64,000 nt of DNA from the NCBI RefSeq assembly GCF_006345805.1, contig NC_043007.1, positions 6,882,001 to 6,946,000 of the forward strand. Reading direction: 5' to 3'. The position numbers and the translations under genes are program-made. Numbering within the stretch: position 1 is the first letter of the stretch; each line of letters opens with the position of its first letter. This document shows, piece after piece, positions 1,528 through 49,666 of the stretch. The notes under the pieces were generated by a model. That model was given only the letters and a program-made list of their open reading frames with translations, was not told the origin of the DNA and searched no databases. The stretch comes from Octopus sinensis. Its lineage: Eukaryota.

Positions 1528-3645
1528 AGTCAGTGTTTACATCAGTTCTACATTCAAGAGAACCTCTCTCATGGAAAGGCGTCTTTTTTTTTTGGCGGTG
1601 AGTCAAAAGTTTTGTTGCGCGTGGATACTTTTTTCTATTGGAATTTTTGTCTATTGTTGAACTTTGAAAATTTCTGTGCTTTTTCCCGGTGACGGGAGAA
1701 AGTAATTGTTGAAATATTGAAATTATTATTATTGAAATTATTAAAGCCGTTGTACTGTTATCCTCATTAAAAGGTGGGGAAATATTATAGGTTTCCCATT
1801 TTTGGGATAAGTAATATATTATTGCGTGGAAAATTAAATCTTAACCGTTGTAGTCTCTATTGTGGCACCGCCCCTAGCGTGGGTGAGATTTGAACTGTTG
1901 TCCTCGTTGCGAGAAAAAAAATATTATAGGTTTCCCATTTTTTGGGATTCTATATTTTATTATTGTGTGGAAAAAAATTAATTTCGAACGTTGTAAGCTT
2001 TGTTGCTACGTCTCGCCCGCCAGCTGGGGTGGGATTTGAACTCTTGTCCTCGTTAAGAGGAAGAAAAAAAGGAAAAAATTATAGGTTTCTTTTTTTCTGG
2101 GATTAAATTGTGTATCATTTATTTCGAACGAATATGTCGGTCGAAATAATCCCAGAAACGAACCAGCTGCATGAGCCAGCAAAAAAGTTCGCGGCAGTAG
2201 CCGCTGTATCTTCTAAGGGGATAGTTATAGAAACGGAGAAGCTCTCCGAGCTTTTTGAAAGGATGAAAGAGGAGGGTGGGAATATAAAGATCTCACCCTC
2301 CCCTAGTGTTGAAAATCTGAAGAGAAGGACAGTCGTTTACAAAACGTACTGTCTTCTTCATCGAAGAAATTCAAGCACTTGAAGAAATTCAAGTGCGAAA
2401 TAGAAAAATGCCTGGCTCCTATATGGAAATATATAAAACACATAGCGAGGGGCCAGGCATATGGAACAATAGAGGCCAGATTAGAGATGACCGAAAAAGC
2501 CCAAGGAGGCGGTGCTGCTCCCACTATACATGGGAAGGAGAACAACACGCGTCCGAATAAACGAAATTGAGGTAAGGGAGGTAATGGCCGCTCTGTTGTA
2601 TAACAGGACGGACAAAATCCCTTTCCTCCAAATTACATGCACTGCCCCACAAAATTGGGGACATTGGTAATTGGATCAAGCAGAGACCTAGGCTGGGGGA
2701 TATTGGTAATTGGAGTGCCGCCAGGTACTTCAGCTTCTCTCTTGGGCGGGCAATGCCGGGCACGAGAGTTCCACAGCGGATTTCTATAGCGGGTTAGAGG
2801 TGATTAAGTCCGAAGACGCCATGGGGGAGAACCTGGGCTACGATGAAATCGGTTAATCAACCTGTTCCGGAGAACTTTCGGGCCGGGTTATCTGGACAGT
2901 TACCAGAAATCCCTGGCTTGGCAGTGCTTCCGTGCGGCTTTACCTGTTAGGGATAATCTGTCAAGGCACGGAAGTGCCGTCTCGCTGACATGTCCGAGGT
3001 GCGAGCAGGATAGGGAAATAGTCTTGCACGCATTTGTGGAATGTCCGGAATTAACGGGACTGATAGTTTTCGCAGAGCAACTGTTGTCATCGATGGGAAG
3101 AGTACAGCTATCAGCTGAAACTATCATCGAGATTGTGCCGCCTCCTGCCCTTAACAGGGAAAGGAAGGCTTGATTTTTCTGCGTAGCAGCCATACTGAAA
3201 GAAACAGAATGGAAGATGCATGTGAGAGGCATAGTGTCGGGTACCTTTGCATCGGGCCAGGGGTTGGTTAACTTTTTTAGTTACCACCTCAGTAATAAGA
3301 CCAGTCTGTAGAAAAGGTACCTGTCACGAGACAGATTCATGAGAGGATGGAAGCCTGTGGCGGGGAAGCTGGGAGTGTTTGGCCCAGGTAAGTGGAAGCC
3401 AAAAACAGAAAGAAAAAGCAAGGGGTTACCCTGGTTGTCGGATGCCTATCCTTCAGAGAAGCCATTACAAATTTCATTTGTAATGAGCAACGCTTAAGTC
3501 AAAACTTATAAACATATTTATTAAATCATTGTATATATTAAATTGTAAATATTTCATCGCTATAGCTACTTCACCCATTTATGTTTGTCTGTTCTTGTTC
3601 GTCCCCTCTTTGTAATGCCTTCATGGCAAATATTTATGAAATGAA
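1528..3645 (+). mobile_element. Internally deleted Tx1/L1-clade non-LTR retrotransposon (5'UTR, ORF1 N-terminus, ORF2 C-terminus, 3'UTR)
   Basis: ORF1-like fragments from ATG 2134; ORF2 C-terminal zinc-knuckle region YQKSLAWQCFRAALPVRDNLSRHG..TCPRCEQDREIVLHAFVECP at about 2902-3050, clearly homologous to the independent copy at 35148-36020; no EN or RT core. The 5' boundary is approximate. Confidence 0.8.
2672..3420 (+). pseudogene. Tx1-type ORF2 C-terminal remnant (zf-RVT-like CCHC region)
   Basis: Manual translation LFRRTFGPGYLDSYQKSLAWQC...CPRC..E..LHAF.EC, with in-frame stops near 3171 and 3308 and frameshifts upstream. Confidence 0.8.
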
Positions 3646-8935: not shown

Positions 8936-8980
<45 letters not shown>

Positions 8981-9097
8981 ATACATATACATGTATGTAA
9001 AGATATAGATGTACACATCTATCTATCTATATATATATATACATATATGTATATATATATGTATATATATATGTATATATATATATCTATATACATA

Positions 9098-9128
<31 letters not shown>

Positions 9129-9170
9129 GTATATATATATGTGTATATATATATATGTGTATTATATATG

Positions 9171-9201
<31 letters not shown>

Positions 9202-9333
9202 GTATATATATATAATATGTAATGTATATATAATTTGTATATATATATGTATATGTATATATATATAGTATATATATGTATATGTATATATATATTTGTA
9301 TATATATATATATGTATAATATATATATAGATA

Positions 9334-9379
<46 letters not shown>

Positions 9380-9420
9380 ATATATATGTATATGCAAACG
9401 CACACATACACCACTCATAT
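8936..9420. repeat. Degenerate (TA)n/(TG)n microsatellite
   Basis: Direct reading. Confidence 0.95.
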
Positions 9421-13807: not shown

Positions 13808-16219
13808 ACACACAAACAAACAGACTTCATGAAAGTGTAATCTTGCAACGTGGTGACGCAGCCATTGATATCAGTGATTTATGGGTTTTAGCGAGGTTAA
13901 TAAAACAGGTGTTGTTCTACTGTTTCACTTCATTTTGTTTTATTTTTGTTTATTTTTCCCTATCAATACTGTTCAGCTAATTGTATATATTTTCGCTGCA
14001 AACATATTTTTCGTATTTCCATCACATATCATCGTCATAGCATTAAGAAAATGATTCCTCAAAGTGATCTTGTTTGAAGTTGTACTTTAGGATGTTATCT
14101 GTTATTTTTGGTATATCAAATAAGAAAAAGAAAACGATATGAATATCAGGCGTTAGTTAATAAAGTACTTTAAGTCTTTAGTCAGGTCACTGTTTTCTAA
14201 CTCATTATCGTTAATTTTTATTTTAGTTAATTAATTCATTCTCGATGACTTAGCAAAAGAGACGGTTGTTTTTATGAAGCAGATAATGAGCAAACTCAAA
14301 GTTTAAAAACTATTACTTAATGTGACTCTAACCTTTGTCAAACTGCGTAGTAATTCAGTTTATTCATTAATGTTTTGATGTGAAAGTGTGTGGAAAGAAA
14401 CATGTACTCGTATGTAACTGTGTGGAAATATGGACGCTGTTGCTTATATTTGTGGGAATATAAACGTGGGTTTAATAGTGTATTTCTAATATGTTTCCCC
14501 CACCCGCTCTTTTCGTTTTTACTCCTAATAATCTAATCTGCCATCGTAACTATCCACATGCATGCTTCGATCCATTTTCTTACCCATGCCCATCCACCCC
14601 AAAATATTTCATTATTCTTTATTGTTAGAACTGTGTGGATTATTTATTCTGTCCTTCCTACAACATCCATGAGCCCTATACATCCACTCAGTGGCATTAA
14701 TCTGCAACTTTACATGTTTGGCTACATGTGGTTATTTGAGCTGTCCAACTTTTTGAACCTTCTTATTCACCTCATCTCTTTTGGTTTCTTATTCTTCTTG
14801 CTTAGCCATCTCTTTATCAATTCCACCTTTCAGCTTTATTTTTCTCTCTTCTTTTCACTGACACCTGACCAACAAGGGAAATGGACTGTTATATTCTACT
14901 ATACAAACAGTAAATAAACTTACCCATTCTTTCCCAGACACAGGTGAGCATCATTTTCCGGAAAATTCCAAGAAGTTATTTAGAAATTAATTACCTACCA
15001 AATAATATACTTAAAAAGAACATTACGATTTCCCAAAATCTTTTTTTATTTTTATGTAATTTAGAATATAAGGGTAGAAGATTATAATTCATTCTTAATA
15101 GAGTTCAATTTACCGATAGTTTCCAGAATGCTGAAGTAGCCAAATTACGGACAAAATAATTTCATTATCAAATACATTCGTTCTTTCAATATTTGGATTA
15201 TAATCGAACACTTTCATTCTTTAAACATAAACATATGCAGCAATCAAAAATTAAACGGTATACAATATGAGTTATTTTGTTAACTCCTTGAAAAAGGAAA
15301 TGCAGTGGAATTGGTGCAGAGACACAGAATGAGAGTAGTTGGACATTTCTAAACGTTCTTGGTTCTATTAGGGAATAATTTTGCCTTCGTAATTAAAAGT
15401 TAATAGATTTCTTTTTACAATGAAAAACCTCTTTGTTTTAAAATTCATTGATTTACTGAATTCTCTGTAAATTATTTCAAAATTAATTGTAATGAGGTAA
15501 AAATAACAATCAACACACCCGTTTTTATATCTATGTACTTATAGGCAAAAAAAAACTATGGTTAGTAAGTAAACTATTTAAGTAAAGAAAGTGCTCCAGA
15601 ATGGTTTTCTTCTTCATTTTTTATTTTCTCATAACTAATTTGGTTTGCTAAATCACCAAACTTTAAGGAAAGATATAGATAGTAGCTCAGTCGGGAAGTT
15701 TTGTAGAGTATGGGTTGTTAAATTTGGCGAAGTGCAACACTGTGTATAGGTATTTAAATATCCTCATGATTATAGTTTGCGAATCCATAAAAACGAAATA
15801 ATTTCACTTGTGCATTATGTGGGGAAGTCTATTGCTTGGATCTTCGTCAAAGGGAAGGGAAGATGTAAATATTAGATTTGTATACTAACGTGATATCCAA
15901 AGACTTTTGAAGAACTTGTGTACGAATATGGATATTACAATATGTTGGGAGATTGAATGAAGCTATTTAAGGCTAAAGTAATACATCAAAAGATCTTCAA
16001 AAGGTCACATCGCACATTCCTAGTAAACTTCGTTCTGATCCTCCAGCATACATACTTGATGCACTCATAACGTATAGCTGTTTTCGTAAATCCATTGCAA
16101 GAACTTCATACACACACACACACACACTTGTATATAAGCAAATATATACGCACAAAATAATTCTAGACACACATATATATACATGTATGTATTCACATAT
16201 ATATACGTGCACAAAATAT

Positions 16220-19109: not shown

Positions 19110-19171
<62 letters not shown>

Positions 19172-19303
19172 GTATAAACGTGTGTGCCTCTGTATGTGTA
19201 TATGTACACATACATATATATATATATTTTTCCGTGTTAATTGTTAACAAGGTAAAAATACACTTATCTATATATATATATATTATATATATATATATTA
19301 TAT

Positions 19304-19338
<35 letters not shown>

Positions 19339-19471
19339 AATATATATATATATATGTATAAACGTGTGTGCCTCTGTATGTGTATATGTACACATACATA
19401 TATATATATATTTTTCCGTGTTAATTGTTAACAAGGTAAAAATACACTTATCTATATATATATATATAATA

Positions 19472-19511
<40 letters not shown>

Positions 19512-19565
19512 ATATATATATATATAAATATATATATATATATTATATATATATATATATAATAT

Positions 19566-19610
<45 letters not shown>

Positions 19611-19896
19611 TATATATATATATATATATGACTATATATATATATAAGACTTTATATGTTAAGATGTTTAAATGTTCGAAGTCACTGCCAACAACATAAT
19701 AATAGATTTGTACTCAATAAAAGTACAGAATAACCATTCAGATTAATGTGAAAAATGATTTTATTATAACTGAACATAAAAATAAACACTCACACACACA
19801 CATACATAACCATGAATATTATATATGTACAAATATATAAAGGCACACAAACTCACATACACACATACACACACATATATATATATATACACAGAC

Positions 19897-26328: not shown

Positions 26329-26360
<32 letters not shown>

Positions 26361-26460
26361 AAGATGGATAGATAGATAGATAGATAGATAGATATAGATA
26401 GATACATAGGTAGGTAGGTAGGTAGATAGATAGATAGATTGATAGATAGATAGATAGATT

Positions 26461-26527
<67 letters not shown>

Positions 26528-26584
26528 TGATAGATAGATAGATAGATTGATAGATAGATAGATTGATAGATAGATAGATAGATT

Positions 26585-26651
<67 letters not shown>

Positions 26652-26982
26652 GGATTGATGGATGGATGGATGGATGGATGGATAGATGGATAGATAGATA
26701 GATGGATAGATGGATAGATAGATAGATAGGTAGGTAGATTGCTAGAGAGGAGGAGAGAGAGAGATCGATAGCTTGCTAGAGAGAGAGAAAGTGAGGTAGA
26801 GAGAGAACGAGTAAGGTCTTCGCAATGCGATGGTACGTATGAAGATATTGATTTTGCACCTGAGTATTAGTAAACCGAAGTAATAGCAGAAGAAACTTGC
26901 TCGAGGTGCCACGCAGTGGGACTGAACACAGAACCATGTGGTTGGACAGCAATCGTCTTACCACATAGCTACACCTGCGCCT
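26070..26982 (-). mobile_element. CORE-type SINE family 1 split by a greatly expanded internal (GATA)n tract
   Basis: Tail remnants at 26070-26250 and head GAGGTGCCACGCAGTGGGACTGAAC...CACCTGCGCC at 26890-26982, in the same orientation. Confidence 0.6.
26330..26750. repeat. (GATA)n/(GATG)n tetranucleotide array
   Basis: Direct reading. Confidence 0.97.
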
Positions 26983-27231: not shown

Positions 27232-27624
27232 TGTTTACTTGCATTTGAGGGAGTGAATATATGGGCGTTTACTGTTTCTCGCACCTTCTGACACATGTAC
27301 ACATATAGTTGGACACATACACATTCACACACAGAAAAACACATACGCACAGAATAAAAAGATATGCACACATACACACACAGACACACACACACAAAAC
27401 TTCTGGCTGCTTATGTGAACCTACATTATGCATGTGTATGCATGCGTGAAATGCGTGAGTATATACGTATATATATATATATATATATATCCATACATAT
27501 ATATTTTTATGTGCATGCGAGTAAGCATACGATAGATAGACAGACAGGTGATAGTTAAATAGATAGATAGACAAACACAGTCAGACAGAGACAGACACAC
27601 AGACTGACAAATAGACAGACAGAC

Positions 27625-27700
<76 letters not shown>

Positions 27701-27709
27701 TGCTAGACT

Positions 27710-27746
<37 letters not shown>

Positions 27747-28324
27747 GTCTTCGCAATGCGATGGTACGTATGCAGGTATTGATTTTGCACCTGAGTGAAA
27801 AATGTAAAGAGAGAAAGTGAAAGAATAAGATATTGATGCGTATGTATACCGCTAATTAACACTTGTGGTGCCCGTGCATGAGCGTGTGCGCCTGCGCGTG
27901 TGTGTGTGTGTGTGTTGTGTGTGTGTGTGGGTGTGTTTACTTGCATTTGAGGGAGTGAATATATGGGCGTTTACTGTTTCTCGCACCTTCTGACACATGT
28001 ACACGTATAGTTGGACACATACACATTCACACACAGAAAAACACATACGCACAGAATAAAAAGATATGCACACATACACACACAGACACACACACACAAA
28101 ACTTCTGGCTGCTTATGTGAACCTACATTATGCATGTGTATGCATGCGTGAAATGCGTGAGTATATACGTATATATATATATATATATATATCCATACAT
28201 ATATTTTTATGTGCATGCGAGTAAGCATACGATAGATAGACAGACAGGTGATAGTTAAATAGATAGATAGACAAACACAGTCAGACAGAGACAGACACAC
28301 AGACTGACAAATAGACAGACAGAC

Positions 28325-28408
<84 letters not shown>

Positions 28409-28417
28409 TGCTAGACT

Positions 28418-28454
<37 letters not shown>

Positions 28455-28603
28455 GTCTTCGCAATGCGATGGTACGTATGCAGGTATTGATTTTGCACCT
28501 GAGTGAAAAATGTAAAGAGAGAAAGTGAAAGAATAAGATATTGATGCGTATGTATACCGCTAATTAACACTTGTGGTGCCCGTGCATGAGCGTGTGCGCC
28601 TGC

Positions 28604-28645
<42 letters not shown>
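27226..28645. repeat. Near-identical tandem duplication, period about 702-708 bp
   Basis: GCATTTGAGG at 27241 and 27943; ACTTGTGGTG at 27861 and 28569; differences are mainly microsatellite length. Confidence 0.95.
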
Positions 28646-29044
28646 TTGTTAATGTGTGCGATCGTGTTTGATATATAATATGTTTATGGAATTGTTTGTG
28701 CTGTTGAAGATGACATTTCTGCATATTATCTCTTTAGCTGTCGTTTATTTATAACCTTAAATGTTAATCTTGCTCTTCAAGAAACCATGCACATTCCCAG
28801 GTGTTGCTACTTCAACTCCTAAAAACCGACAACAACAACAACTGGGAGATGAAATGCAAATCCCAGCAGAAGCGAGAACCTCATTTCTCCTATGTTACAC
28901 TTCATTTTTCTTGTGATTGTTGTTGTTTTTATTGTTATTATTATTGTTGTCTTTGTTATTTTTGTTGTTTTCGCTGACATTACGTTGTGTTTTTTTTTTA
29001 CTTTTTTTCTCGTTACTCCTATCTTCCACCTTTAATCTTTTCTA

Positions 29045-31830
29045 CTCTAGGCACAATTTTTGGGGAGGGGGCGACAGTCGATTAGATCGACCCCAGAATG
29101 CAACTGGTACTTAATCTATCGACCCCGAAAGGATGAAAGGCAAAGTCGACCCAGCAGACTCTTACTCCTTTAATACATCGTTGATGTTGATGGAAATTTA
29201 TTAATAGTAGTATTGTTAGTATTCGTGTTATTGTTATTGATGCTGTTGTTGTTGTTGCTGATGATGTTTCAGATTTTTCTGGCTGTTGATGTCAGCTGGC
29301 AAAATCGTTAGTATGTCAGATTTCGCGACATTTCGTCCGTCTTTTCTGAGTTCAAATTCCGTCGAGGTCGACTTTGTCTTTTATCCCTTCAGGGTCGATG
29401 AAATAAGTACCAGTTAAAGAATGGGGTCGATGTTATTGATTTCTCTCCTCCACATTGCTGGCTTTGTGCCAAAATTTGAAATTATTATTAGTATTACTAT
29501 TATTGTTGTTGTTTTTTATGTATTTTGCTGTTGTTGTCGTTGTTGTGAGCTGGCAGAATCGTTAGCACGTCGGACAAAATACTTAAAATTTCTTCTGACT
29601 TTATTCCGGAGTTCAAATTCTGCTGAGGTCGTCTCCGCCTTTTATCATTTCTTGGTCGATGAAATAGCTACCAATGAAACAGGAGCGACGATGTAGTCAA
29701 CCGACCTTTTCCCAAATATTTCAGACATGATGACCGTTTATTGTAGAAATGGTTATTAATATTCTAATCGCGTAGGAAAACAGGGATGTGACACCGTTGT
29801 CAGAACATTCGACAAAAATACTTAGCAACTTTGTTTTTTGCGGAGTTCAAATCCCTCTACGATTGAATTTGCCATTAATCCGTTCGGGGTCTCAAGTACT
29901 GAATTAAATGCAAACAACTAAATCCATTGCCCTAAAATTGTTATTCTTTTACTAAGATTTGCAACCGTTATTATTAGATTTGATATCGCGAGATATCACA
30001 CAATCATCAGCGTGTGTATTCGGGGTCTTTAAATTGAGTTCAAATCCCACCGATGTTGATTTTCCCTAAAATAATTTCGGGATCGATATAATAAGTGTCA
30101 GTTGAGCTCTGAGAACCGATGTAAAAAATTAATCTCTTCCTTTAAAGTTGCTGGCTGTGTACCAAAACCTGACACCATTAAAAATAAGGCCACAAGTTGG
30201 AGAATCGTCATTGCAATAAACAAAATAACTGGTGGTATTTCTTCCACCTCTTTACGTTTTGAGTTCAAATTGCGTTAAGGTTGACGTTGCCTAGAATCGA
30301 AGTAATTTACTAACTTAAATATTTATTAAATATTTATTTCTTTATTGCCCACAGGGGGCTAAACATAGAGGGGACAAACAAAGACAGACAAGGGGATTAA
30401 GTCGATTACAATGATTAAATGGTATTTATTTAATCGTCCCCGAAAGGATGAAAGGAAAAGTCGACCTCGGCGGAATTTGAACTCAGAACGTAGAGACAGG
30501 CGAAATACCTATTTCTTTACTACCTACAAGGGGCTAAACGCAGAGAGGAAAAACAAGGACAGACAAACGGATTAAGTTGATTACATCGACCCCAGTACAC
30601 AACTGGTACTTATTTAATCGACCCCGAAAGGATGAAAGACAAAGTCGAACTCGGCGGAATTTGGACTCAGAACGTAACGGCGTTTCGCCTGGCGTGCTAA
30701 CGTTTCTGCCAGCTCGCCACCTTCTCCCCTTAAAATATTGTTAGCCTTGAGAAAAAAAACTGGAATAATTATTATCATCCTGAAGGGGACGAGCTGAAAA
30801 AGGTACGGAGCGGTGTTTCTTCCGGCTGCTTCCGTTTTGAGTACAAATATCACCGAGGTCAACTTTGCCTTCCATCTTCGCGGAATCGATGTAATAAAAA
30901 ACACTGAAGCACTGGGTTCAATGGAATTCCCTCGGTCCGTGCCATCAAATTTGCTGGCGTAGGGCCAAAATTTGAATCTTATTAATTGCAGAATCGTCGA
31001 GGGTTTGGGGAAAATGTTTTAAAGTATTTAGTTACGGTTGACTTCCAATCCCTCGAAGGTGGATTTTGCTTTTCATTTTTCGAGATCGATAATATGAAGT
31101 ACGAGTGATGTTCCGGGGTCGATGACATCGACAACCCTTCTTCATAAATATTCTGGACTTGTATCTAAATAAGAAGCATTGAAAGATGGGCTGGCAGAAT
31201 ACTTAAAGCTACGAAAAGCAATGCTTTGCAGTGTTAGATCTGGTATTTCAATTCAAGTCCTCTCGAAGCCAACTTTGAGGTTTACTTTTTCGGGGTCGAT
31301 AAAATAAGTGATATTTAAGTAGGGATGTCAAGACTCCCCACTTCTGTCTTTATACTAAAACTAGAAACTGTTATTTCAGGGAGAGGAGCTGAGATAATCC
31401 TATAAGTGTTGAAAAAAATGGCTTGCGGTTGCTACTCCGGCTAATTACGCCATGAGGTCAAATCTAGTTGAGGCCAAATTTACCGTTTGTGCTTATCCTT
31501 TTGATAAAATAAAGAAATGCACCGAGTTATTTAATCAGCAAACTTTATCTCAACAAAATTCTTGCATTGGGTCTCGATTAGAAACTATTGTTATTATGGA
31601 ATTGGTCAGGCGTCAAGCTGGCAGAATTGTTAGCATGCCAGACAAGTTCTGTAATGGTATTTCGTCCGTTTTTAAATCCTAGGTTCAAATTCCGCAAAAA
31701 TCGACTTGACTTTTCGTCATCCTTTAAAAGTCGATAAAATAAATACCAGTCAAGCTGTGGGATCGAGGTAATCGACCAGACCTCCCCCCCCCGCCTTAAA
31801 ATTGCAGGCCTTGTGCCAAAATTAGAAAGA
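29045..31830. mobile_element. Dense cluster of at least 10 diverged SINE family 2 units (mostly +; a younger - strand dimer at about 30335-30722)
   Basis: Repeated GAGTTCAAATTCC..GAGGTCGACTTTG..TCATCC..GGGGTCGAT and tail TGCTGGC.TTGTGCCAAAATTTGAA motifs at roughly 200-280 bp spacing. Confidence 0.8.
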
Positions 31831-33639: not shown

Positions 33640-34320
<681 letters not shown>

Positions 34321-35147: not shown

Positions 35148-36020
35148 TTATTCTTTTATTAGCCACAAGGGCTCACATACAATAACTTTAAAGGACATGC
35201 AACAACATAAAGACAAAACCGGGACTATACGATGGGTTTTCTGCGTGTAAACAAGATAAATAACCATTAAAATTGAACAAATTAAAACTGCTAATAGGGG
35301 AGGCGCTTTAAGGGCCTTGTGGAAAACCCCACAAAAGCCACGGGTGCTTGAACAACAAGGCAAAAACACTTCTTTTGTTTACAGGTGCAAGCTCAGAATT
35401 GGTCCTTTCACACTGGTCATTTTTCCAACATTTACCCACCTTTCAACAAACTTGCTACAAGGCAACACTTCTCTCTCCATCCTCAACTTCCTTTTCAAAT
35501 GAAACTTGAAAAAGTTGATGAGGGCTTGGCTAAAAAGTGTCTGTCTTTAGCCCTTTCAAACGGGTCCACCATACTACCTCTTTCGCTACAGCCACTGGAC
35601 AAATAAAAATTGCCTGCCCCTCCCGTCCAAAAGAGGGCGGCGGAGTATTCTTCACAATGGATTCAGCTGATAGCCGGATCTGCCCCACACGCGGCAGCAG
35701 GTATTCTACATTAACCTACAGGGCAGCAATACTCGGGCACTGGACCAGGGCTTCCAGAACGGTTTCATCGTTCTGGGCGCACCTCGGGCAGGCTCAGCTG
35801 ACGGCACTTCAGTGGCTGTAAAGTTTATCTCGAACAGGCAGCACCCCTCGGTGGCACTGCCAGGCAAGGGATTTCTGGAAGTTATCCATAGGCCCGGATC
35901 CGAAAGTTCTCCGAAACAAACCGGCTGGTTGATCTTCATCGACGCCCGGAGTTTCCCGGAGAATGTCGTCACATTTTCCTCGGAGCCGATGCGAATGTCA
36001 TGAGAACAACCTCTGTCACC
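35148..36020 (-). mobile_element. 5'-truncated Tx1/L1-clade non-LTR retrotransposon (ORF2 C-terminus plus 3'UTR)
   Basis: Minus-strand translation GLFRRTFGSGPMDNFQKSLAWQCHRGVLPVRDKLYSH..CPRCAQNDETVLEALVQCP...; ends GAGCCCTTGTGGCTAATAAAAGAATAAA and runs into (ATT)n. Confidence 0.85.
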
Positions 36021-36076
36021 AAACCAAAATACTTTTTAATGTTGCACCAACAAACGCAGCAGCAGCCGCATTGGCG

Positions 36077-36165
<89 letters not shown>

Positions 36166-37289
36166 TGTTGTTGTTGTTGTAATATTGGTGTGATAATGGT
36201 TCATTTGGAGGTGGCTATGAACATACTGAAGTTAAAAATGTGGCGCTTATAATGATATTCATGATGACGATCTGATTGTTTCGATGGTGTCGATAAAGAT
36301 TCAGTGGCTTATGAATAAATTGGTGATGAAGATCTGGCGGTGATGATGATGGCGACGATGATGTGAATGATGAGCGTGCGCTGGTAAGAGGCTGACGATG
36401 ATTCCCGTAATCTGATAGTAGGGAAAATATTTCATAAAAATGATTCGTTGATGATTAGGTTAAAAATATCTTGTCTTCATGATTTTTGTGCTTGTATGGA
36501 AGAAAAGTTAATCAAAATTTACCTGTACGAATTTTATGAATTTCACATGGATACAAAAAAATTATAGAATAGGGTTTGCCTGGAGTTGAATCTGTGCTGT
36601 AGAATTAGAAGTATATATTCGTGCTGTTCGTTTTTGAAATGAACCGTCACTCCGCTGGAACCTATTTTTTCGAGACATTCAAGACAAAGATCACGTTGCT
36701 CGGATTAAAACTGTCGATAGGATAGATCAAAATTTATTATTGTCAACCATTTTACTCCTGAATTTTATTGATGCTACAAACGAATTTCAGTCGCAAATTG
36801 TGAGGTACGAAGTGGGTGCAGTCTAAAAAGAGCAGCCACTTTATGTGTATGTATTCGTTGTCGTTGAAGGTTTGTTACATTTGAGACAAGCAGGGCGGCC
36901 AGTTTGATTACCAGTATAGGGCGGTTCAAAACGCGCGCCACGTCACTCCCTAATGCACTTCAATAACTGGGACCAACGTATGAATAAGGGTAATTTCCAT
37001 ATCCAAAGATTGACGGTTCAAATTTAGTGTACGCCATTCTCAGAGTATATTTTTAAAAAATTTATGGTTTTGCTTTTATTATTGAGGCTATTAGATTGCG
37101 ACTAGAACTTATTATAACGGTATCGATTCATAAATCACCTTATTACGAGGACGTAAACAAACTGACACTGGCCGACATGTATCGAGACACAAAGAAAAGT
37201 GAAAGTAAAAACAGAAAACAATTTCAGACGTGAGAATTGCTCGTGCGTACACTTACATCGAACCCGTTATCAATCACACACCTGAATGC

Positions 37290-37615
37290 GTGGCTCAGAG
37301 GCTCACATTACATTTAAATGGGTTTTAGCTCAATCCCAGCCCAATGCGCGGTGTCTCAGGCAAATGCCTTCAACAAACTCCCAGATCAAACAATGACTCC
37401 TGACTGAATTTGTTAGATCGATCTCCTCGAACACAACTGACAACCGGTATCGGTTTGTTTATGTCTCCATAACTTAACTGCTCGGCAAAAAAAAAAACGC
37501 TGAAATAAGTACCAGACTTGAAGAAAAACTGTACTGGCGTTCAACCATTCGACCAAACCGTGGTGCTCCAGCATGACTGCATCCAATAACGGATATATGC
37601 AAAAGATAAAAGATA
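37290..37615 (+). mobile_element. Degenerate CORE-type SINE family 1
   Basis: Tail motifs GACAACCGGT..GTTTGTTTATGTC..AATAAGTACCAG..GGTGCTCCAGCATG..AAAAGATAAAAGA. Confidence 0.6.
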
Positions 37616-37629
37616 CATTGTATGTTATT

Positions 37630-37690
37630 TGTAGCTATTTTCTCTTCCCAGGTAAGTCTTGGGCAACGAGATCTAGGATTAAGTAAGTTT
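37630..37690 (+). promoter_or_regulatory. Candidate recursive splice site (3'ss fused to 5'ss) with a 31-nt cryptic exon
   Basis: TTTTCTCTTCCCAG (37638-37651) is immediately followed by GTAAGT (37652-37657); a second GTAAGT lies at 37683-37688. Confidence 0.5.
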
Positions 37691-38200
37691 CTAACCAAAG
37701 GCATCCACTGTTTTGGGGTTTTTTTTTGTATATTTACGTACAGTCTATCTAAGACTACATTGTACAATGTAACCTTCATTGTTTTAGATAGTAGTACGTC
37801 TGCTGGATCGGAATACGGCAATATAAACAATACAATCGTAGACAGAAAAAATAAGCTATGGCTGCAGATGCATCTTTCATCAGTTGCGTTTCTAGCTTTA
37901 ATCGTTTTGTTTACTTGGACTTATTCGTGTACGCAACGCCATCAGTTTCGGTGCTGGCTCTAAATCCGCTGGAAATTCCACAGAGATAAAAAGTGAATGA
38001 GTCGCACTTCTGACACGAAATGTAGAACGCGGTATTGATTTATAAATCTTAGATATGATTATATAATTGGTAATATATTATGGCTGCAAAACAAAATGTA
38101 GTTTCCCTACCAGCAATTTACGTGTGCATATGTGTGTGTGCATATGTGTGTGTGTGTGTATATGTGTGCATTATATATATGTATATATATATATATATAT

Positions 38201-38238
<38 letters not shown>

Positions 38239-38385
38239 TTACATACATACATACATATCATATGTATATGTATATATGTATATATATATTATATGTGTAT
38301 ATGATTATATCTATACTATATATATATCATATATATATATATATGCGTGTATGTATGTATGCACTTGTGTTTATGCGTGAGTGTA

Positions 38386-38416
<31 letters not shown>

Positions 38417-38419
38417 AAA

Positions 38420-41400
38420 CAGCTACCATGGCCACTAATCAGTACTAATACAATTAATGAACTCTTGACGCTCCACAATCCAGAGCCCTTAACAGTTCCA
38501 ATATCCGCTTCATTTCCTCGGAATACCCCAAGTGACCCATCACCATCATCGTCATCATGTTCTACTGCTGCTACCATTATCACAACTAAACAATAGCAAC
38601 AACAACAAGATAAGCATCGGAAATCACTCCTCAGTACTAGAACAATCGATGACCCATTAACCAGCACAGTCCCTAACTCTTCTCCTCAATCAGGCCACTC
38701 ACATTCTTCCAAGAATGGCACAAGAGATCCATCATCGCCATTGTCATCGTATTCTGCTGCTACTACTACTGCTACAACTCTATTCTACTATTACCACCAC
38801 TACTACTACTCCAATTAATGAAGAATCACTCCCTTTCCCCACCGTCTGCCTCAATCTGAATGCGTACCTGAAATCTTCCAACTGTCAATAAAACAAAATT
38901 AGGAACACAGGACTCCCCAAATTATTCTGCCATTCTCACCGCAGAAGCCTATGCATACGCAGTGACTGTAACTTCACCCATTTACCTGGGACAAGACATA
39001 CAATTTGTAAACCACAGCAAAACTTTTTAAAATAAAAGAAAAATTCCAAAAGAAAAAGAAATTCAGAAATTTAAAAATCCAACAAGGTGAACCTGCTCTT
39101 CCTCCTATTGTTCCCAAAGACTGGAATATCTACAATTCCCTGTAAATATTTTAAATCTCACTCAAAATAAAATAAGTTAGGAAACTTACATACCTACAGC
39201 TATCGTACACAGAAACGGTCAGCTTAAAATACAAAAAAAAAGAAATCTTTAATATCTACGACTAATGTGCGACAACTTATCCTTTCCTCTCCCCCTGAGT
39301 ATTCGAAAGCATAAATGTCATCGTCCTTTTTATTCTAAGAACACTACTATTTCTCTCTGTGCAGTCATACAAAAGACCATATTAAGTAAATCACAGATCT
39401 CAACCACCTGTACTATGCATCCGCGAAAATCTCAACGATTCTATGTGGTGAAAAGATTAGAAAACGGCAACATTCCCATAAAAAACCTTCTTGGCAAGAG
39501 CGTATCCAACAACAAATTAAACTACTTAGGTCTGACACTGAATATTTGAAAAACCTTAAGGTTGACAAGACTACCTAACCTACAAAAACCCCAAAATTAA
39601 TGAAAAAATATAATATGAAAACTATACTTGATATTGATGCCACCATAGAAACCATCAAGCAAAAGGTATCTGCTAAAGCTGCCCGCATAGCGAGGTATGA
39701 AAAGCGTGTTAGATTCTTCAAGGACAACAACATGTTCAAAAATAACCCCAAAAGTTTTTACAGGAAGATAGGAAAAACACCAATTACTGGAAAGTCTGTA
39801 CCATCAAAAGAAGAAGCGCTGGGATTTTGGAATAAAATTTGGGCAGAAGAAAAAACGCACAACAAAAAGGCCCCCTGGATTGATAGAATATCTACAGAAA
39901 TGGACTCCTTAGAAGAGCAAAAGTGAGAGGGTGTCAAGGTAGAAGATATAAGATCTGCTCTCAGGAGGTCAAGCAAATGGAAATCTCCAGGAAAGGATAA
40001 AATTCCTAACTTCTGGTTGAATGCCTTCCCAGAGAGCCATGAACTGCTAACATAACTTTACAATGATGTTTTGCAATACCCTAGTAGGATGCCTCCTTGG
40101 CTAGTTAATGGGTTAAGATTCCTGCTTCCAAAAAGTGAAGAAACAAATGAACCAAAAAACTATAGACCCATAACCTGCTTAACAACTATGTATAAAGCGC
40201 TAACATCTGTCCTGACGGAATATACCTATAGTTTTTTTAACAGACAGCAGCATATTCCCTAATGAACAGAAAGGATGTAAACGTGGATCCTATGGTTGTA
40301 AAGATCAACTACTCATCAATAAGATGATCTTAGAAGATTGTCAAAAACGACACAAAAAACTTGACAAAAGCCTGGATAGGCTATAAAAAGGCTTTTGATA
40401 GCCTACCACATAGCTGGATTAAGAAATGCCTGGAAATGTATAAAATAGCACCTACTCTGCGAAACTTTTTGTCTGTAAGTATGAGATCATGGAGAACCAC
40501 ACTAACTTCGAACAGTGACAATGAATCTCTAAATGCTGGTGATGTAAACATTTCATGTGACATTTTCCAGGGTGACTCACTATCACCACTCCTCTTTTGT
40601 TTAGCCTTAATACCTCTCTCAAAATTGCTCAATGACGCGCAGTACGGATATAAAATGTTTGATAAAAATATAAATTATCTCATTTACATGGATGATTTAA
40701 AGCTCTTTGCAAAAAATGACCAACAACTCAAGGGCTTACTAGCGATTGTTAAACAATTCAGTGATGACATCAGAATGCAATTTGGCCTCGATAAATGTGC
40801 AAAAGCTACCTTTATCAAAGGAAAAATGACAGAAACATCTAACGTTAACCTTAATCAGCAGCATGTCATAAAAGAATTAGACCCAGCGGAGAGCTACAAG
40901 TACCTAGGGGTATTTGAAGGGGATGGAATAAGGCATTCTGTGATGAAGGAAAGGATAAGAAGAGAATGTTATCGCAGAGTAAGAGCAATACTCAAGACAG
41001 AGCTGAATGCGAGAAACAGGATCGAAGCGATCAATGTTTTAGCCATACCAGTCGTGACTTACAGTTTCAATATTGTTAACTGGTCAATTACTGAAATATG
41101 TAATCTTGACAGAAAAATGCGAAAACTGTTGACAATGCATAAAATGCACCACCCTAAGGCAGATATAGAACGACTTTATCTGCCAAGAAAAGAGGGAGGC
41201 CGTGGAATTTTACAACTGGCAATAACAATGAAGATTGCTACAATTAGCCTAGACACCTACCTGAAAAACTCTGAGGACTGGATGTTAAAACTTGTCTCAA
41301 AACATGAAAACAAGAAAGCATCATACTCAGTCACAAAACAGGCAAAGGAATATCTAAGTGAATTCCGAATTCAACAAATTTCGGAATTAGACATACAAGA

Positions 41401-42426
41401 AACAAGCACAGAAAAAGCTAAGCGCATGAAAACCCGTGCTAAAACTGCTGCCTTAGATATTCTGAATGATAAATGGCAAGAAAAACCTTTCTATGGCAAA
41501 TACCCAAAGAGAGCGAATAATGCAGATGTTGACAAAGCCCTGACCCATCAATGGCTAATGGCCTCTGGCTTAAAATCTGAAACAGAAGGGTTTATCATAG
41601 CAGTTCAAGATCAATGCCTACCTACAAGGAACTACCAGGCCAACATATTAAAGAACGGCAGTAGCCCAACATGTCGTGTACGTCAACAACAAAATGAAAC
41701 CATTGATCATGTAGTCTCGAAGTGCAGTCTTCTTGCGCCTACAGAGTATCTCAACAGGCATGATAGAGCTGCACAATATATTCACTGGGTAATTTGCAAA
41801 AACCTGGATTTGCCCCATGAAAAACTGGTGGGAACACAAACCACCTCCATTGCTTGAAAATGACCACATCTCACTCCTCTGGAACTTCACCATTCAAACT
41901 GACAGAAAGATAGATGCAAACAGGCCAGACATCATATTGAAAGACTTCAGACAAAGAACATGCCTTCTCATTGATATGACTGTCCCAATCGATATAAACG
42001 TATCTGTCAAGACCTACCAAAAACTGAGCAAATATATAGATCTTGAAATAGAAATCAGCAAAATGTGGAACCTGAAGACTAAAACAATACCTGTTGTCAT
42101 AGGTGCCCTGGGAATGATAGCAAAAGGGGCTGATTGCTACCTAACTGAGATACCAGGAAACCCCAAAATGGCAGAAATTCAAAAGATAGTGCTCATGGGA
42201 ACTGCTCATATCCTACGCAAAATACTTTTTATGTAATCTCAATTTTTAAAACAAACATAATTTTCGTATGTTTTTTTTTAGACATTCACTAGTACAACAC
42301 TAAATACAAAACCAAATATATGACACACTAGGCATAACAACAACATGAACTTCCAACCTGTTGTCTCTTGAGGTCTCTGGGTGAGATTTGGAGCCAACTT
42401 GTACAAATGTAAAGCAAAAGTCAAAC

Positions 42427-43515: not shown

Positions 43516-44090
43516 GGCGGTGAGCTAGCAGAAACGTTAGCACGCCGGGCGAAATGCGTAGCCGTATTTCGTCTGCCGCTACGTTCTGAGTTTCCGCCGA
43601 GGTCGACTTTGTCTTTCATCCTTTCGTGTTCGATTAAATAAGTACCAGTTACGCATTTGGGATCGATATAATCGACTTAATCCGTTTGTCTGTCCTTGTT
43701 TGTCCTCTCTGTGTGTAGCCTCTTGTGGGTAGTAAAGAAATAGGTATTTCGTCTGTCTTTATGTTCTGATTTCAAATTCTACCGAGGTGACTTTGCCCTT
43801 TCATCCTTTCGGGGTCGATTAAATAAGTATCAGTTGCGCACTGGGGTCGATATGATCGATTTAATCCGTTTGTCTCTCCTTTCCATGTTTAGCCCCTTGT
43901 GGGTAGTAAAGAAATAGGTATTTCGTCTGTCTTTACGTTCTGAGTTCAAATTCTGCTGAGGTCGACTTTGCCATTCATCCTTTCGGGGTGGATAAATTAA
44001 GTACCAGTTGCGTACTGAAGTCGATCTAATCGACTGGCCCCCTCCAACCAAAAAATCTCGGGCCGTGTGTCCAGAGTAGTAAATGATATT
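43516..44090 (+). mobile_element. SINE family 2 trimer: head-[core-tail A]-[core-tail A]-[core-tail B]
   Basis: Units restart at (G/C)GTATTTCGTCTG at 43563, 43743 and 43917. Confidence 0.9.
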
Positions 44091-47606: not shown

Positions 47607-48304
47607 TATATGAAACGGGAAAGAGTGAATGTAAAAAAGAATCGCATCTTTTATATTTTATTTCATGTATTTTCTCGTGGTCCCTACAAAACTGAAGAAC
47701 CACTTCACTATAAGATTTTTTCGTTTTACTTATTTGTGATGGTGGTTTGAAAAAGTGGAATTCATCCAAAGATTTCCTTCTCTCGTTGAATTGTTTGCGA
47801 CAATGTGCAACATATTAGAGTCATCGAAGGACCGGGTGATATTTAACAAGTTAGTAGATTATTTCTTCAGACCAAGAAAGACTAATGTAAATCCGGCAGG
47901 CCCCGGACAGATTTCATACTGGAAATTTCAACAAAACATATTTGTGACTTTTTCAGTTACCAGAAAATACACATGGCGACGTTAGTGCGCAGTGGTTTCA
48001 ACGGGGATAGTTACAAAGCAAAGGTTTACTCAGACGATTGCGCCTGTGTTTGGTACTGTTCTTCACAGTGTCTTCAGTACTGTAAGATAGAGAGGGAGTT
48101 TGTAGGAAAAATTGGCTGCGGATGACAATGGAATTTCTGTAGCTGTTTCTTCTGAGTGTTCGGTGGCAACAAAGCAACGAGAAAAGAAGAAAGACAAAAT
48201 TATGAGAGGGTGGGAATATGAAGATGGCTGAAATAGAGAAAGGAATGCAAACAGAGAAATGAAGGAGAGACAAGAATTTATGAATCAGATATCAGATATC
48301 GCCA

Positions 48305-49010
48305 CTTCATCTTACATGGATATCGCCTCACCACTATCCAACCGCCCTTGCCAGAGCACTTCCGTGGACCGTGCATTTGCTTTCTCCCCTGCTCCGCCCT
48401 GCCGTCTCCTGTTTTCCCTCACCTACCACTCCACCACCCTACATCACCAACGCAGTTTTCCGAGCCTTCCGGCGACTCCAGTCCGACCCCTCCACTTCGA
48501 ACATCTTCCCTAACCGACCCCTCTCCTTCTTCAAACGAATCCACAACCTACGAGACCTCTTGTTCCACAGCTTCTTCCCTAAACCAACCTCCCAACCCGG
48601 CTCGTTCCCCTGTTCCCGCCCACGCTGCCGCAAATGCCCTTACCTCTCCAACACCACCCTCCTCACCAGCACCCATTATCAACCCTATCATATCCCCGAC
48701 TCCTTCATCTTCACTTCTAGCAATATCATCTACTGCATCTCCTGCTCTCTCTCCCCTTCTTTATACATCGGGCAAACGGGACGCCGCTCTAGCTGACCGG
48801 TTGGTGGAACCCCTGCGAGACATCCGACATGGCAATGACACACCGGTCTGGAGCCATTTCCGTCTTCCGGTCACTCTTTGCAACACCTGTTCGTGTTCGA
48901 ATTGTCCTTCTACAGGGGTCATCCAGACTCCCGTTTGCGCCCTGAACAGTGAGATTAATCTTCTCTCTTGGCTCATTTGCCCCACATGGGCTCACCTCTC
49001 CTCCCCTCTT
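48305..49010 (+). pseudogene. Penelope RT thumb/linker and GIY-YIG endonuclease remnant
   Basis: IYCISC..YIGQTGR motif in ORF 48371..48796; several frameshifts. Confidence 0.88.
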
Positions 49011-49666
49011 CATGTAACTCTTCTACCCTCTCCTCTCTTCCTTTCACATCTACTTACTCCCACCCACCTCTCCTCTCTTGCTCCGTCCCCTACTTCTTCT
49101 CGTCACTTCTACCCTCCTTTTCTCTACTCTTCGCTCCTGCCTCCCTTCTCTCTTCCCCTCCCTTCATCGTCACCTCTCCCTCGTAACCCATCCCTACATT
49201 ATCCAACCCCACCTTCACTATCCATCCCATCCCTTACACCTACTCCCACATACCTCACCTTTAACCCCCTCAGCCTAACCCATACCCCACCCTTACTTTC
49301 CTCACTCTCGCCTCCCTCACATCCCAACACCACAACACCTCACCACACACCACCATACCACATAACACCACATCACCTCACCCCAGCGCGCACACACTAG
49401 CCTTGACCACTTCCCAGCACCCATATCATCATCCACACACCTACACATCCACATAATCACACGTCAAAGTCACCAGCCCTATTCCACACGCACATGCATG
49501 CTCTCTTATACACATGTACGCGCACATTCGTTTTGGGATCACCACTACTTTATTATCTTCCCTTCTTCCTAGCACTCCTGTGTGACCCCTCTGTCCGACA
49601 TTTGCCATGATAGATCGCTAGCCACTACACATTCTTTATTTTCTCTCCTTGTTTCTTTCTGTGTTC

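What the first reader, a model, noticed from the sequence alone, without database searches (positions are those of the whole stretch)
37620..37700. Recursive-splicing (ratchet point) architecture with a cryptic 31-nt exon
Seen: a strong 3' splice site TATTTTCTCTTCCCAG directly fused to a perfect 5' consensus GTAAGT (37651/37652), with a second perfect GTAAGT 31 nt downstream (37683), in unique DNA just past a SINE tail. Known: recursive sites in long Drosophila and vertebrate introns have this AG|GT fusion and are defined through a short downstream cryptic exon with its own 5'ss; such exons are often frame-disrupting, and 31 is not a multiple of 3. Inference: the window lies within a very long + strand intron that is spliced stepwise. 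I know of no description of recursive splicing in cephalopods, but I cannot check the literature.
Basis: partly seen in the sequence, partly recalled or inferred. Interest (0 to 1): 0.75.

Follow-up and report, generated by a model that had tools for sequence, protein, structure and literature searches.

The report
Splice-site-like motif, recursive splicing unproven
The fused acceptor/donor motif is really there and is rare for one 64-kb window, but an octopus-sized genome should hold hundreds of such motifs by chance, and no host gene, strand, conservation or RNA evidence could be obtained, so recursive splicing remains a hypothesis.

Summary
TATTTTCTCTTCCCAG|GTAAGT has its junction at 37651/37652, and a second GTAAGT starts at 37683, 31 nt downstream. 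The motif lies about 24 nt beyond the end of a SINE copy, in DNA with no other copy in the window. It is the best of 365 AG|GT sites on both strands. About 0.01 sites this good are expected per 64 kb, which scales to about 350 per 2.5 Gb by chance.

The interpretation could not be tested. Three protein searches with unique ORFs of both strands found no exon. No ORF of the window is on record, so neither host gene nor strand is known. No orthologous DNA or RNA data was reachable.

The taxon claim holds: the adjacent LINE reverse transcriptase is closest to an Octopus vulgaris protein. No paper in the searched library describes recursive splicing in cephalopods.

The architecture matches fly and vertebrate ratchet points: a strong acceptor|donor, a weaker downstream donor and an out-of-frame 31-nt exon. 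In mouse, however, only about 20 of 4.8 million gene-sense AGGT sites are recursive.

My estimates are about 0.65 for a chance motif, about 0.2 for a genuine recursive site and about 0.1 for the edge of an ordinary unannotated exon.

The parts
37636..37651 (+). 3' splice-site-like element TATTTTCTCTTCCCAG, with 12 consecutive pyrimidines at 37638-37649 followed by AG
   Evidence: Scores 12.4 bits on my approximate acceptor matrix and is the best acceptor in 37200-37700.
37652..37657 (+). 5' splice-site consensus GTAAGT fused directly to the AG (putative ratchet-point donor)
   Evidence: CAG|GTAAGT scores 12.9 bits in its genomic context.
37652..37682 (+). 31-nt interval between the two donors, the putative cryptic recursive exon. 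It is not a multiple of 3 and has a TAA stop in one phase.
   Evidence: Read directly. No RNA evidence is available.
37683..37688 (+). Second GTAAGT, in the context TAA|GTAAGT. It is weaker than the first donor.
   Evidence: 6.3 bits, and the only donor above 4 bits within 380 nt downstream.
37624..37628 (+). Only branch-point-like sequence upstream (gTTAT, A at -25). It is a relaxed match; no strict yUnAy occurs within 60 nt. An AG lies at 37633-37634 (-19/-18).
   Evidence: (regex scan found no strict match) and reading. Inference only.
37438..37613 (+). SINE copy immediately upstream. The motif lies outside it.
   Evidence: ten copies in the window, 6 on + and 4 on -.

Best explanation
The motif is most likely a fortuitous juxtaposition of a pyrimidine tract plus CAG with GTAAGT. 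It sits in non-coding, repeat-rich, AT-rich octopod DNA, with a second moderate donor nearby by chance, and has no demonstrated role in RNA processing.

If the + strand is transcribed here, the sequence would be competent to act as a cryptic or recursive splice site. Nothing obtainable here shows that it is transcribed, used or conserved.
For: - The chance expectation is about 7e-8 per position. That is only 0.009-0.01 per window, but about 350 per 2.5-Gb genome.
- The extra donor has about a 15% chance of occurring at 20-100 nt.
- No exon was detected on either strand. The splice-site/ORF scan gave only repeat or low-complexity candidates. Three searches of 5.8 billion proteins with the unique ORFs gave 0 hits.
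- No window ORF is on record.
- The neighbourhood is SINE, LINE and microsatellite DNA.
- There is no strict branch-point consensus within 60 nt upstream.
- In mouse, only about 20 recursive sites exist among 4.77 million gene-sense AGGT sites (PMC8797253).
- The O. vulgaris genome is gene-poor with short median introns (PMC10700109), so an exon-free 64-kb stretch is more often intergenic than intronic. This last point is inference.
Against: - The site is near-perfect and is the top AG|GT site in the window.
- A downstream donor at 31 nt that is weaker than the fused donor is exactly the arrangement described for skipped recursive exons (PMC8605326).
- The second-best fused motif in the window, at 14944, is also on the + strand. 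The probability of two sites scoring at least 22.3 bits is about 0.01.
- A 64-kb window without exons is what a giant intron would look like.
- If octopods have as many recursive sites as flies or humans, a motif this strong could have a predictive value of tens of percent.
Confidence: 0.65

Rival explanations
1. It is a genuine recursive splice site (ratchet point) in a very long + strand intron. The upstream exon is first joined to 37652 after exon definition across the 31-nt cryptic exon, using the donor at 37683. The regenerated, stronger donor at 37652 then removes the rest of the intron, so the 31-nt exon never reaches the mRNA.
For: - All sequence-level features are met: strong acceptor|donor fusion, a weaker downstream donor at 31 nt and an out-of-frame interval.
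- The motif is rare per window.
- A second fused motif lies on the same strand at 14944.
- The window is free of detectable exons.
- The architecture is as published for flies and mammals (PMC8605326, PMC8797253).
- Long neuronal genes exist in octopus (PMC7222433).
Against: - There is no evidence for any host gene or for + strand transcription.
- Conservation and RNA evidence were not testable.
- A 31-nt exon is short for exon definition; the fly value is about 50 nt (PMC8605326).
- The branch point is weak.
- A young, sense-oriented LINE with an open 498-codon ORF lies 1.6 kb downstream on the + strand. Such elements are usually disfavoured in sense orientation within introns; this is general knowledge from vertebrates and untested in octopods.
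- The site at 14944 has a competing AG 6 nt upstream and no good downstream donor.
Confidence: 0.2
2. It is one edge of an ordinary but unannotated exon. Candidates are a 31-nt micro- or poison exon (37652-37682) that is sometimes included, or an exon of a non-coding RNA or UTR that ends at 37651 and uses GTAAGT as its normal donor. In either case the fusion of the two sites would be incidental.
For: - Both sites are individually strong.
- Mouse data show 'RS-like cryptic exons' that share the AGGT start but behave as exons (PMC8797253).
- Weak acceptors at 37360 and 37385 could open a SINE-derived exon that ends at 37651.
Against: - There is no protein homology for any frame across the site.
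- In RS-like cryptic exons the downstream donor is the stronger one (PMC8797253); here it is the weaker.
- The upstream acceptors are poor, at 5-6 bits.
- There is no transcript evidence.
Confidence: 0.1
3. The motif belongs to a low-copy repeat or transposon family that happens not to have another copy in this window. Its sequence would then reflect the element and not the host's splicing.
For: - About 34% of the window is covered by within-window repeats.
- The site lies 24 nt from a SINE end.
Against: - No other copy of 37634-38031 was found, even at word size 9.
- There are no convincing terminal repeats; only a 22-nt inverted pair with 77% complementarity at 37601/37763.
- The six aligned SINE copies diverge completely beyond about 37612.
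Confidence: 0.05

Closest known systems
Drosophila intronic ratchet points (e.g. Ubx, kuz, Bx; Duff et al. 2015; Joseph et al. 2018/2021, PMC8605326)
   Same: A pyrimidine tract plus CAG is fused to GTAAGT. A short cryptic exon follows, with its own weaker donor, and its length is out of frame.
   Different: Fly sites lie in known introns among the longest 3% (PMC6110457). They are ultraconserved at the motif and are supported by junction, saw-tooth and lariat reads. None of that is known here. The fly cryptic exon is about 50 nt, against 31 nt here.
Vertebrate recursive splice sites in long neuronal genes (Sibley et al. 2015; mouse brain set in PMC8797253)
   Same: The AGGTAAGT core and an enriched upstream pyrimidine tract. 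The site is defined through a downstream recursive exon.
   Different: Vertebrate sites lie in introns over 51 kb of genes over 294 kb, mostly in the first two introns (PMC8797253). No host gene has been identified here. In mouse the motif alone predicts function very poorly, at about 20 sites.
RS-like cryptic exons, pseudoexons and poison exons in long introns (PMC8797253, PMC7175933)
   Same: An intronic AG|GT start followed by a nearby donor, able to give a short frame-breaking exon.
   Different: In those cases the downstream donor is the stronger of the two, and the exon appears in some transcripts. Here the downstream donor is weaker and no transcript is known.

Membership tests
Recursive splice site (ratchet point) | Juxtaposed strong 3' splice site (pyrimidine tract-YAG) and 5' splice site (GTRAGT) around AG|GT | tested here: met
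   TTTTCTCTTCCCAG|GTAAGT. It is the top-scoring of 365 AGGT sites.
Recursive splice site (ratchet point) | Downstream 5' splice site that delimits a short cryptic recursive exon, usually out of frame | tested here: met
   GTAAGT at +31, scoring 6.3 bits. 31 is not a multiple of 3. This feature alone arises by chance about 15% of the time.
Recursive splice site (ratchet point) | The ratchet-point donor is stronger than the recursive-exon donor, so the cryptic exon is skipped | tested here: inconclusive
   One search gives 12.9 against 6.3 bits in the genomic context. The real regenerated donor depends on the last 3 nt of an unknown upstream exon.
Recursive splice site (ratchet point) | Location inside a long intron, on the sense strand of a transcribed gene | tested here: inconclusive
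   No exon was found on either strand and no gene record could be anchored. The window may be a giant intron or intergenic. Repeat-masked parts and ORFs shorter than 40-45 aa were not searched.
Recursive splice site (ratchet point) | Evolutionary conservation focused on the acceptor|donor motif | not testable with these tools
   No cephalopod DNA collection is available. The metagenome scan for the 24-mer gave 0 matches, and ORF handles across the site gave 0 homologues.
Recursive splice site (ratchet point) | RNA evidence: ratchet junction reads, saw-tooth coverage in nascent or total RNA, recursive lariats | not testable with these tools
   No RNA-seq access.
Recursive splice site (ratchet point) | Usable branch point upstream of the pyrimidine tract | tested here: inconclusive
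   One search found no strict yUnAy in 60 nt. There is a relaxed gTTAT with its A at -25, and an AG at -19/-18 that is probably too close to that branch point to compete. The last point is inference.

The most novel reading that the evidence does not exclude
Position 37652 is a functional ratchet point in a giant + strand intron of an octopod gene. This would be the first recursive splice site described in a mollusc or lophotrochozoan. It would imply that exon-definition-based recursive splicing predates the split between protostome and deuterostome lineages, or recurs wherever introns become very long.
Probability: 0.2. Interest if true: 0.6.

Novelty: not a real feature. Interest (0 to 1): 0.3.

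Why it matters
Recursive splicing has been documented only in insects and vertebrates. The paper library searched here holds no report for cephalopods. Octopods independently evolved large brains and long neuronal genes (PMC7222433). A verified site would extend the phylogenetic range of the mechanism and give a concrete locus for testing it.

As it stands the finding is a motif match. Its value is as a cheap, well-defined candidate to look up in existing octopus annotation and total RNA-seq. If RNA data confirmed it, it would be a new member of a known kind, not a new mechanism.

Tried and rejected
It was split into three searches: local ORFs 36100-39260 on both strands, + strand ORFs of at least 45 aa, and - strand ORFs of at least 40 aa. 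All three gave 0 hits.
2. I tried to anchor the window to an annotated genome through ORFs. The reverse transcriptase ORF is not on record, and ten ATG ORFs are not in the collection.
3. I tried to reach orthologous DNA. A 24-mer scan of metagenome contigs gave 0 matches. The other DNA collections hold no cephalopods, so they were not scanned.
4. Rfam found nothing at gathering scores. At E<=1 in 36000-39500 there were only microsatellite-type sub-threshold miRNA hits at 38.1-38.4 kb, and nothing at the site. ARAGORN found no tRNA.
5. Transposon orientation bias was examined as a proxy for the transcribed strand. SINE_A is 6+/4-. SINE_B is 2/9 relative to an arbitrary reference whose sense is unknown. 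LINE pieces are mostly +. This is too weak to use.
6. Global GC and AT skews are near zero and dominated locally by microsatellites. They give no strand inference.
7. Pfam on the ORFs spanning the site on both strands gave no family.
8. A search for terminal or inverted repeats that would make the site part of a mobile element found only chance-level pairs.
9. I had assumed a Penelope-like GIY-YIG reading for 48.2-49.4 kb. Pfam did not confirm it, so it is kept only as a remark.

Full report
**1. What is in the sequence**

Positions 37636-37657 on the + strand read TATTTTCTCTTCCCAG|GTAAGT. The AG ends at 37651 and the GT starts at 37652. A second GTAAGT occupies 37683-37688, so the interval 37652-37682 is 31 nt. 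Twelve consecutive pyrimidines precede the AG.

**2. Surroundings**

The window is about 36% G+C. It is packed with microsatellites (168 or more TRF rows) and interspersed repeats, and 34% of it has another copy inside the window.

A SINE copy occupies 37438-37613. An alignment of six copies shows that they share sequence up to about 37612 and diverge completely after that. Positions 37634-38031 have no other copy, even at word size 9.

A LINE with an open RVT_1 reverse-transcriptase ORF lies at about 39250-42240 on the + strand. Its closest named relative is a predicted Octopus vulgaris protein, 86% identical over 159 residues.

**3. Is the motif more than chance?**

- AGGTAAGT occurs five times on the two strands.
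- The degenerate pattern YYYYYYYYNYAGGTRAGT with up to one mismatch matches only here, against 0.18 expected from dinucleotide shuffles.
- I scored every AG|GT site with approximate metazoan acceptor and donor weight matrices. These are my own, from general knowledge, and are not trained on octopus. The site ranks first of 365 AGGT sites, at 12.4 + 12.9 = 25.3 bits.
- An exact convolution under the window's base composition gives 7e-8 per position. That is 0.009 expected per 64 kb on both strands, and about 350 in a 2.5-Gb genome.
- A null that keeps local composition in 500-nt blocks gives 0.01 per window.

The second donor, TAA|GTAAGT, scores 6.3 bits. Donors at least that good occur at 0.002 per nt, so one falls 20-100 nt downstream by chance about 15% of the time. 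It is the only donor above 4 bits within 380 nt downstream.

The motif is unusual for one window (p about 0.01). Across a genome of this size it is expected hundreds of times with no function.

**4. Fine anatomy**

No strict yUnAy branch-point consensus lies within 60 nt upstream. The best candidate is gTTAT, with its A at 37627 (-25). An AG at 37633-37634 lies only 6-7 nt from that A, so it would probably be bypassed (and reading; inference).

The 31-nt interval has a TAA stop in one phase and shifts the frame in all phases. In its genomic context the fused donor is much stronger than the downstream donor. That is the arrangement reported for fly cryptic recursive exons, which are always skipped (PMC8605326). 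The real regenerated donor would depend on an unknown upstream exon.

**5. Is there a host gene, and on which strand?**

This is the crux, and it could not be settled.

- A scan for acceptor-ORF-donor exon candidates returned only repeat or low-complexity pieces.
- The ORFs spanning the site on both strands have no Pfam family.
- I translated all stop-to-stop ORFs in non-repeat, non-low-complexity DNA and searched them as composites against 5.8 billion proteins, a set that includes octopus predicted proteins. The three queries were the ORFs in 36100-39260 on both strands, the + strand ORFs of at least 45 aa, and the - strand ORFs of at least 40 aa. All three returned no hit at E<=0.001.
- The reverse transcriptase ORF and ten ATG ORFs are not on record, so no annotated locus could be fetched.

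The window therefore has no detectable protein-coding exon on either strand. Three limits apply: exons inside ORFs shorter than 40-45 aa were not searched, repeat-masked parts were not searched, and no positive control was run.

An exon-free 64 kb fits a giant intron. With 8.36 genes per Mb, a median gene of 20 kb and a median intron of 2.5 kb in O. vulgaris (PMC10700109), it fits intergenic DNA at least as well (inference).

Transposon orientation and compositional skews gave no usable strand signal.

**6. Conservation and RNA evidence**

Neither could be tested. No cephalopod nucleotide collection is available. A scan of metagenome contigs for the 24-mer across the junction found nothing. 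Using the ORFs across the site as handles for orthologous contigs also failed.

**7. Comparison with what is known**

Fly ratchet points are a fused acceptor|donor followed by a short (about 50 nt), poorly conserved, out-of-frame cryptic exon with its own donor. The motif itself is ultraconserved, and the ratchet donor outcompetes the exon donor (PMC8605326). They occur in the longest 3% of introns and show twice the conservation of control AGGT sites (PMC6110457).

In mouse brain, about 20 sites are recursive out of 20.4 million AGGT sites, of which 4.77 million are gene-sense. Those 20 lie in introns over 51 kb of genes over 294 kb and are enriched for AGGTAAGT and an upstream pyrimidine tract (PMC8797253).

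The candidate meets every sequence-level criterion. None of the contextual criteria could be assessed.

The library holds no paper linking recursive splicing with octopus. Its only co-occurrence with 'cephalopod' is two unrelated entries in one reference list.

**8. Weighing the explanations**

About 350 chance motifs of this strength are expected genome-wide. If octopods had a mouse-like number of recursive sites, a few percent of such motifs would be real. With a fly-like or human-like number it would be tens of percent. Octopods may also have none.

The downstream donor multiplies the odds roughly five-fold (about 0.8 against 0.15; my estimate).

A second fused motif on the same strand, CCCAGACACAG|GTGAGC at 14944 scoring 22.3 bits, adds a little. 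Given the first site, another site that good on the same strand has a probability of about 0.05. However, it has a competing AG 6 nt upstream and no good downstream donor.

Integrating these points, my estimates are:
- about 0.65 for a chance, non-functional motif;
- about 0.2 for a real recursive site;
- about 0.1 for the edge of an ordinary unannotated or cryptic exon;
- about 0.05 for part of a low-copy repeat.

**9. Verdict**

If true it would be a new member of a known kind, the first mollusc example, and not a new mechanism.

The decisive checks are simple lookups in existing octopus annotation, whole-genome alignments and nuclear or total RNA-seq. They lie outside the tools available here.

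Noticed in passing
window 14923-14949 (+): This is the second-best fused acceptor|donor motif in the window, and it is also on the + strand: CCCATTCTTTCCCAGACACAG|GTGAGC, scoring 22.3 bits against 0.11-0.12 expected per window. It has a competing AG 6 nt upstream and no good donor within about 100 nt downstream.
   Followed up: partly
window 39250-42240 (+): A LINE-type retrotransposon with an open 498-codon ORF (40361-41857) carrying RVT_1. Upstream pieces are in other frames (39253-40259), so the element is frameshifted. The closest named relative is an Octopus vulgaris predicted protein (86% identity over 159 aa), and there are more than 15,000 homologues in the representative library.
   Followed up: partly
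window 48232-49400 (+): A C-rich segment (GC 0.47, GC skew -0.43) holds a 387-codon Pro/Ser/Thr-rich ORF. An overlapping frame reads CRKCPYL...IIYCISC...LYIGQTGRR, continued after a frameshift by LADRLVEPLRDIRHGN. From memory this resembles the GIY-YIG nuclease of Penelope-like elements, but Pfam gives no hit. The segment was masked as a presumed transposon and so was not included in the protein-database searches.
   Followed up: partly
window 2847-3170 (+) and 35533-35957 (-): Two copies of a LINE 3' end in opposite orientations. The first carries a zf-RVT domain (E 1.3e-08).
   Followed up: partly
window 27269-27946 and 27971-28650: An apparent tandem duplication of about 700 bp. Identical sets of TRF arrays recur with an offset of 702 bp, for example 27330-27370 and 28032-28072, or 27577-27699 and 28277-28407.
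   Followed up: no
window 26329-26739; 33694-34309; 8936-9393; 19111-19646: Very long microsatellites: (TAGA)x103, (AT)x316, (TA)x232 and (TA)x271. In total more than 168 tandem-repeat rows were reported in 64 kb.
   Followed up: no
window 38126-38421: Sub-threshold Rfam hits to mir-297, mir-466, mir-1277 and mir-3149 (best 46 bits against a gathering score of 90). All lie on a (TG)n/(TA)n microsatellite and are almost certainly composition artefacts.
   Followed up: yes
window 37601-37622 / 37763-37784: A 22-nt inverted repeat with 77% complementarity brackets the motif, with 140 nt between the arms. It is at chance level and was not pursued as an RNA structure.
   Followed up: no
window 43564-44033, 30380-30677 and nine other places: A second SINE-like family of about 175 bp is sometimes found in tandem pairs. 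It shows a skewed orientation, 2 against 9 relative to the reference copy, whose sense is unknown.
   Followed up: partly
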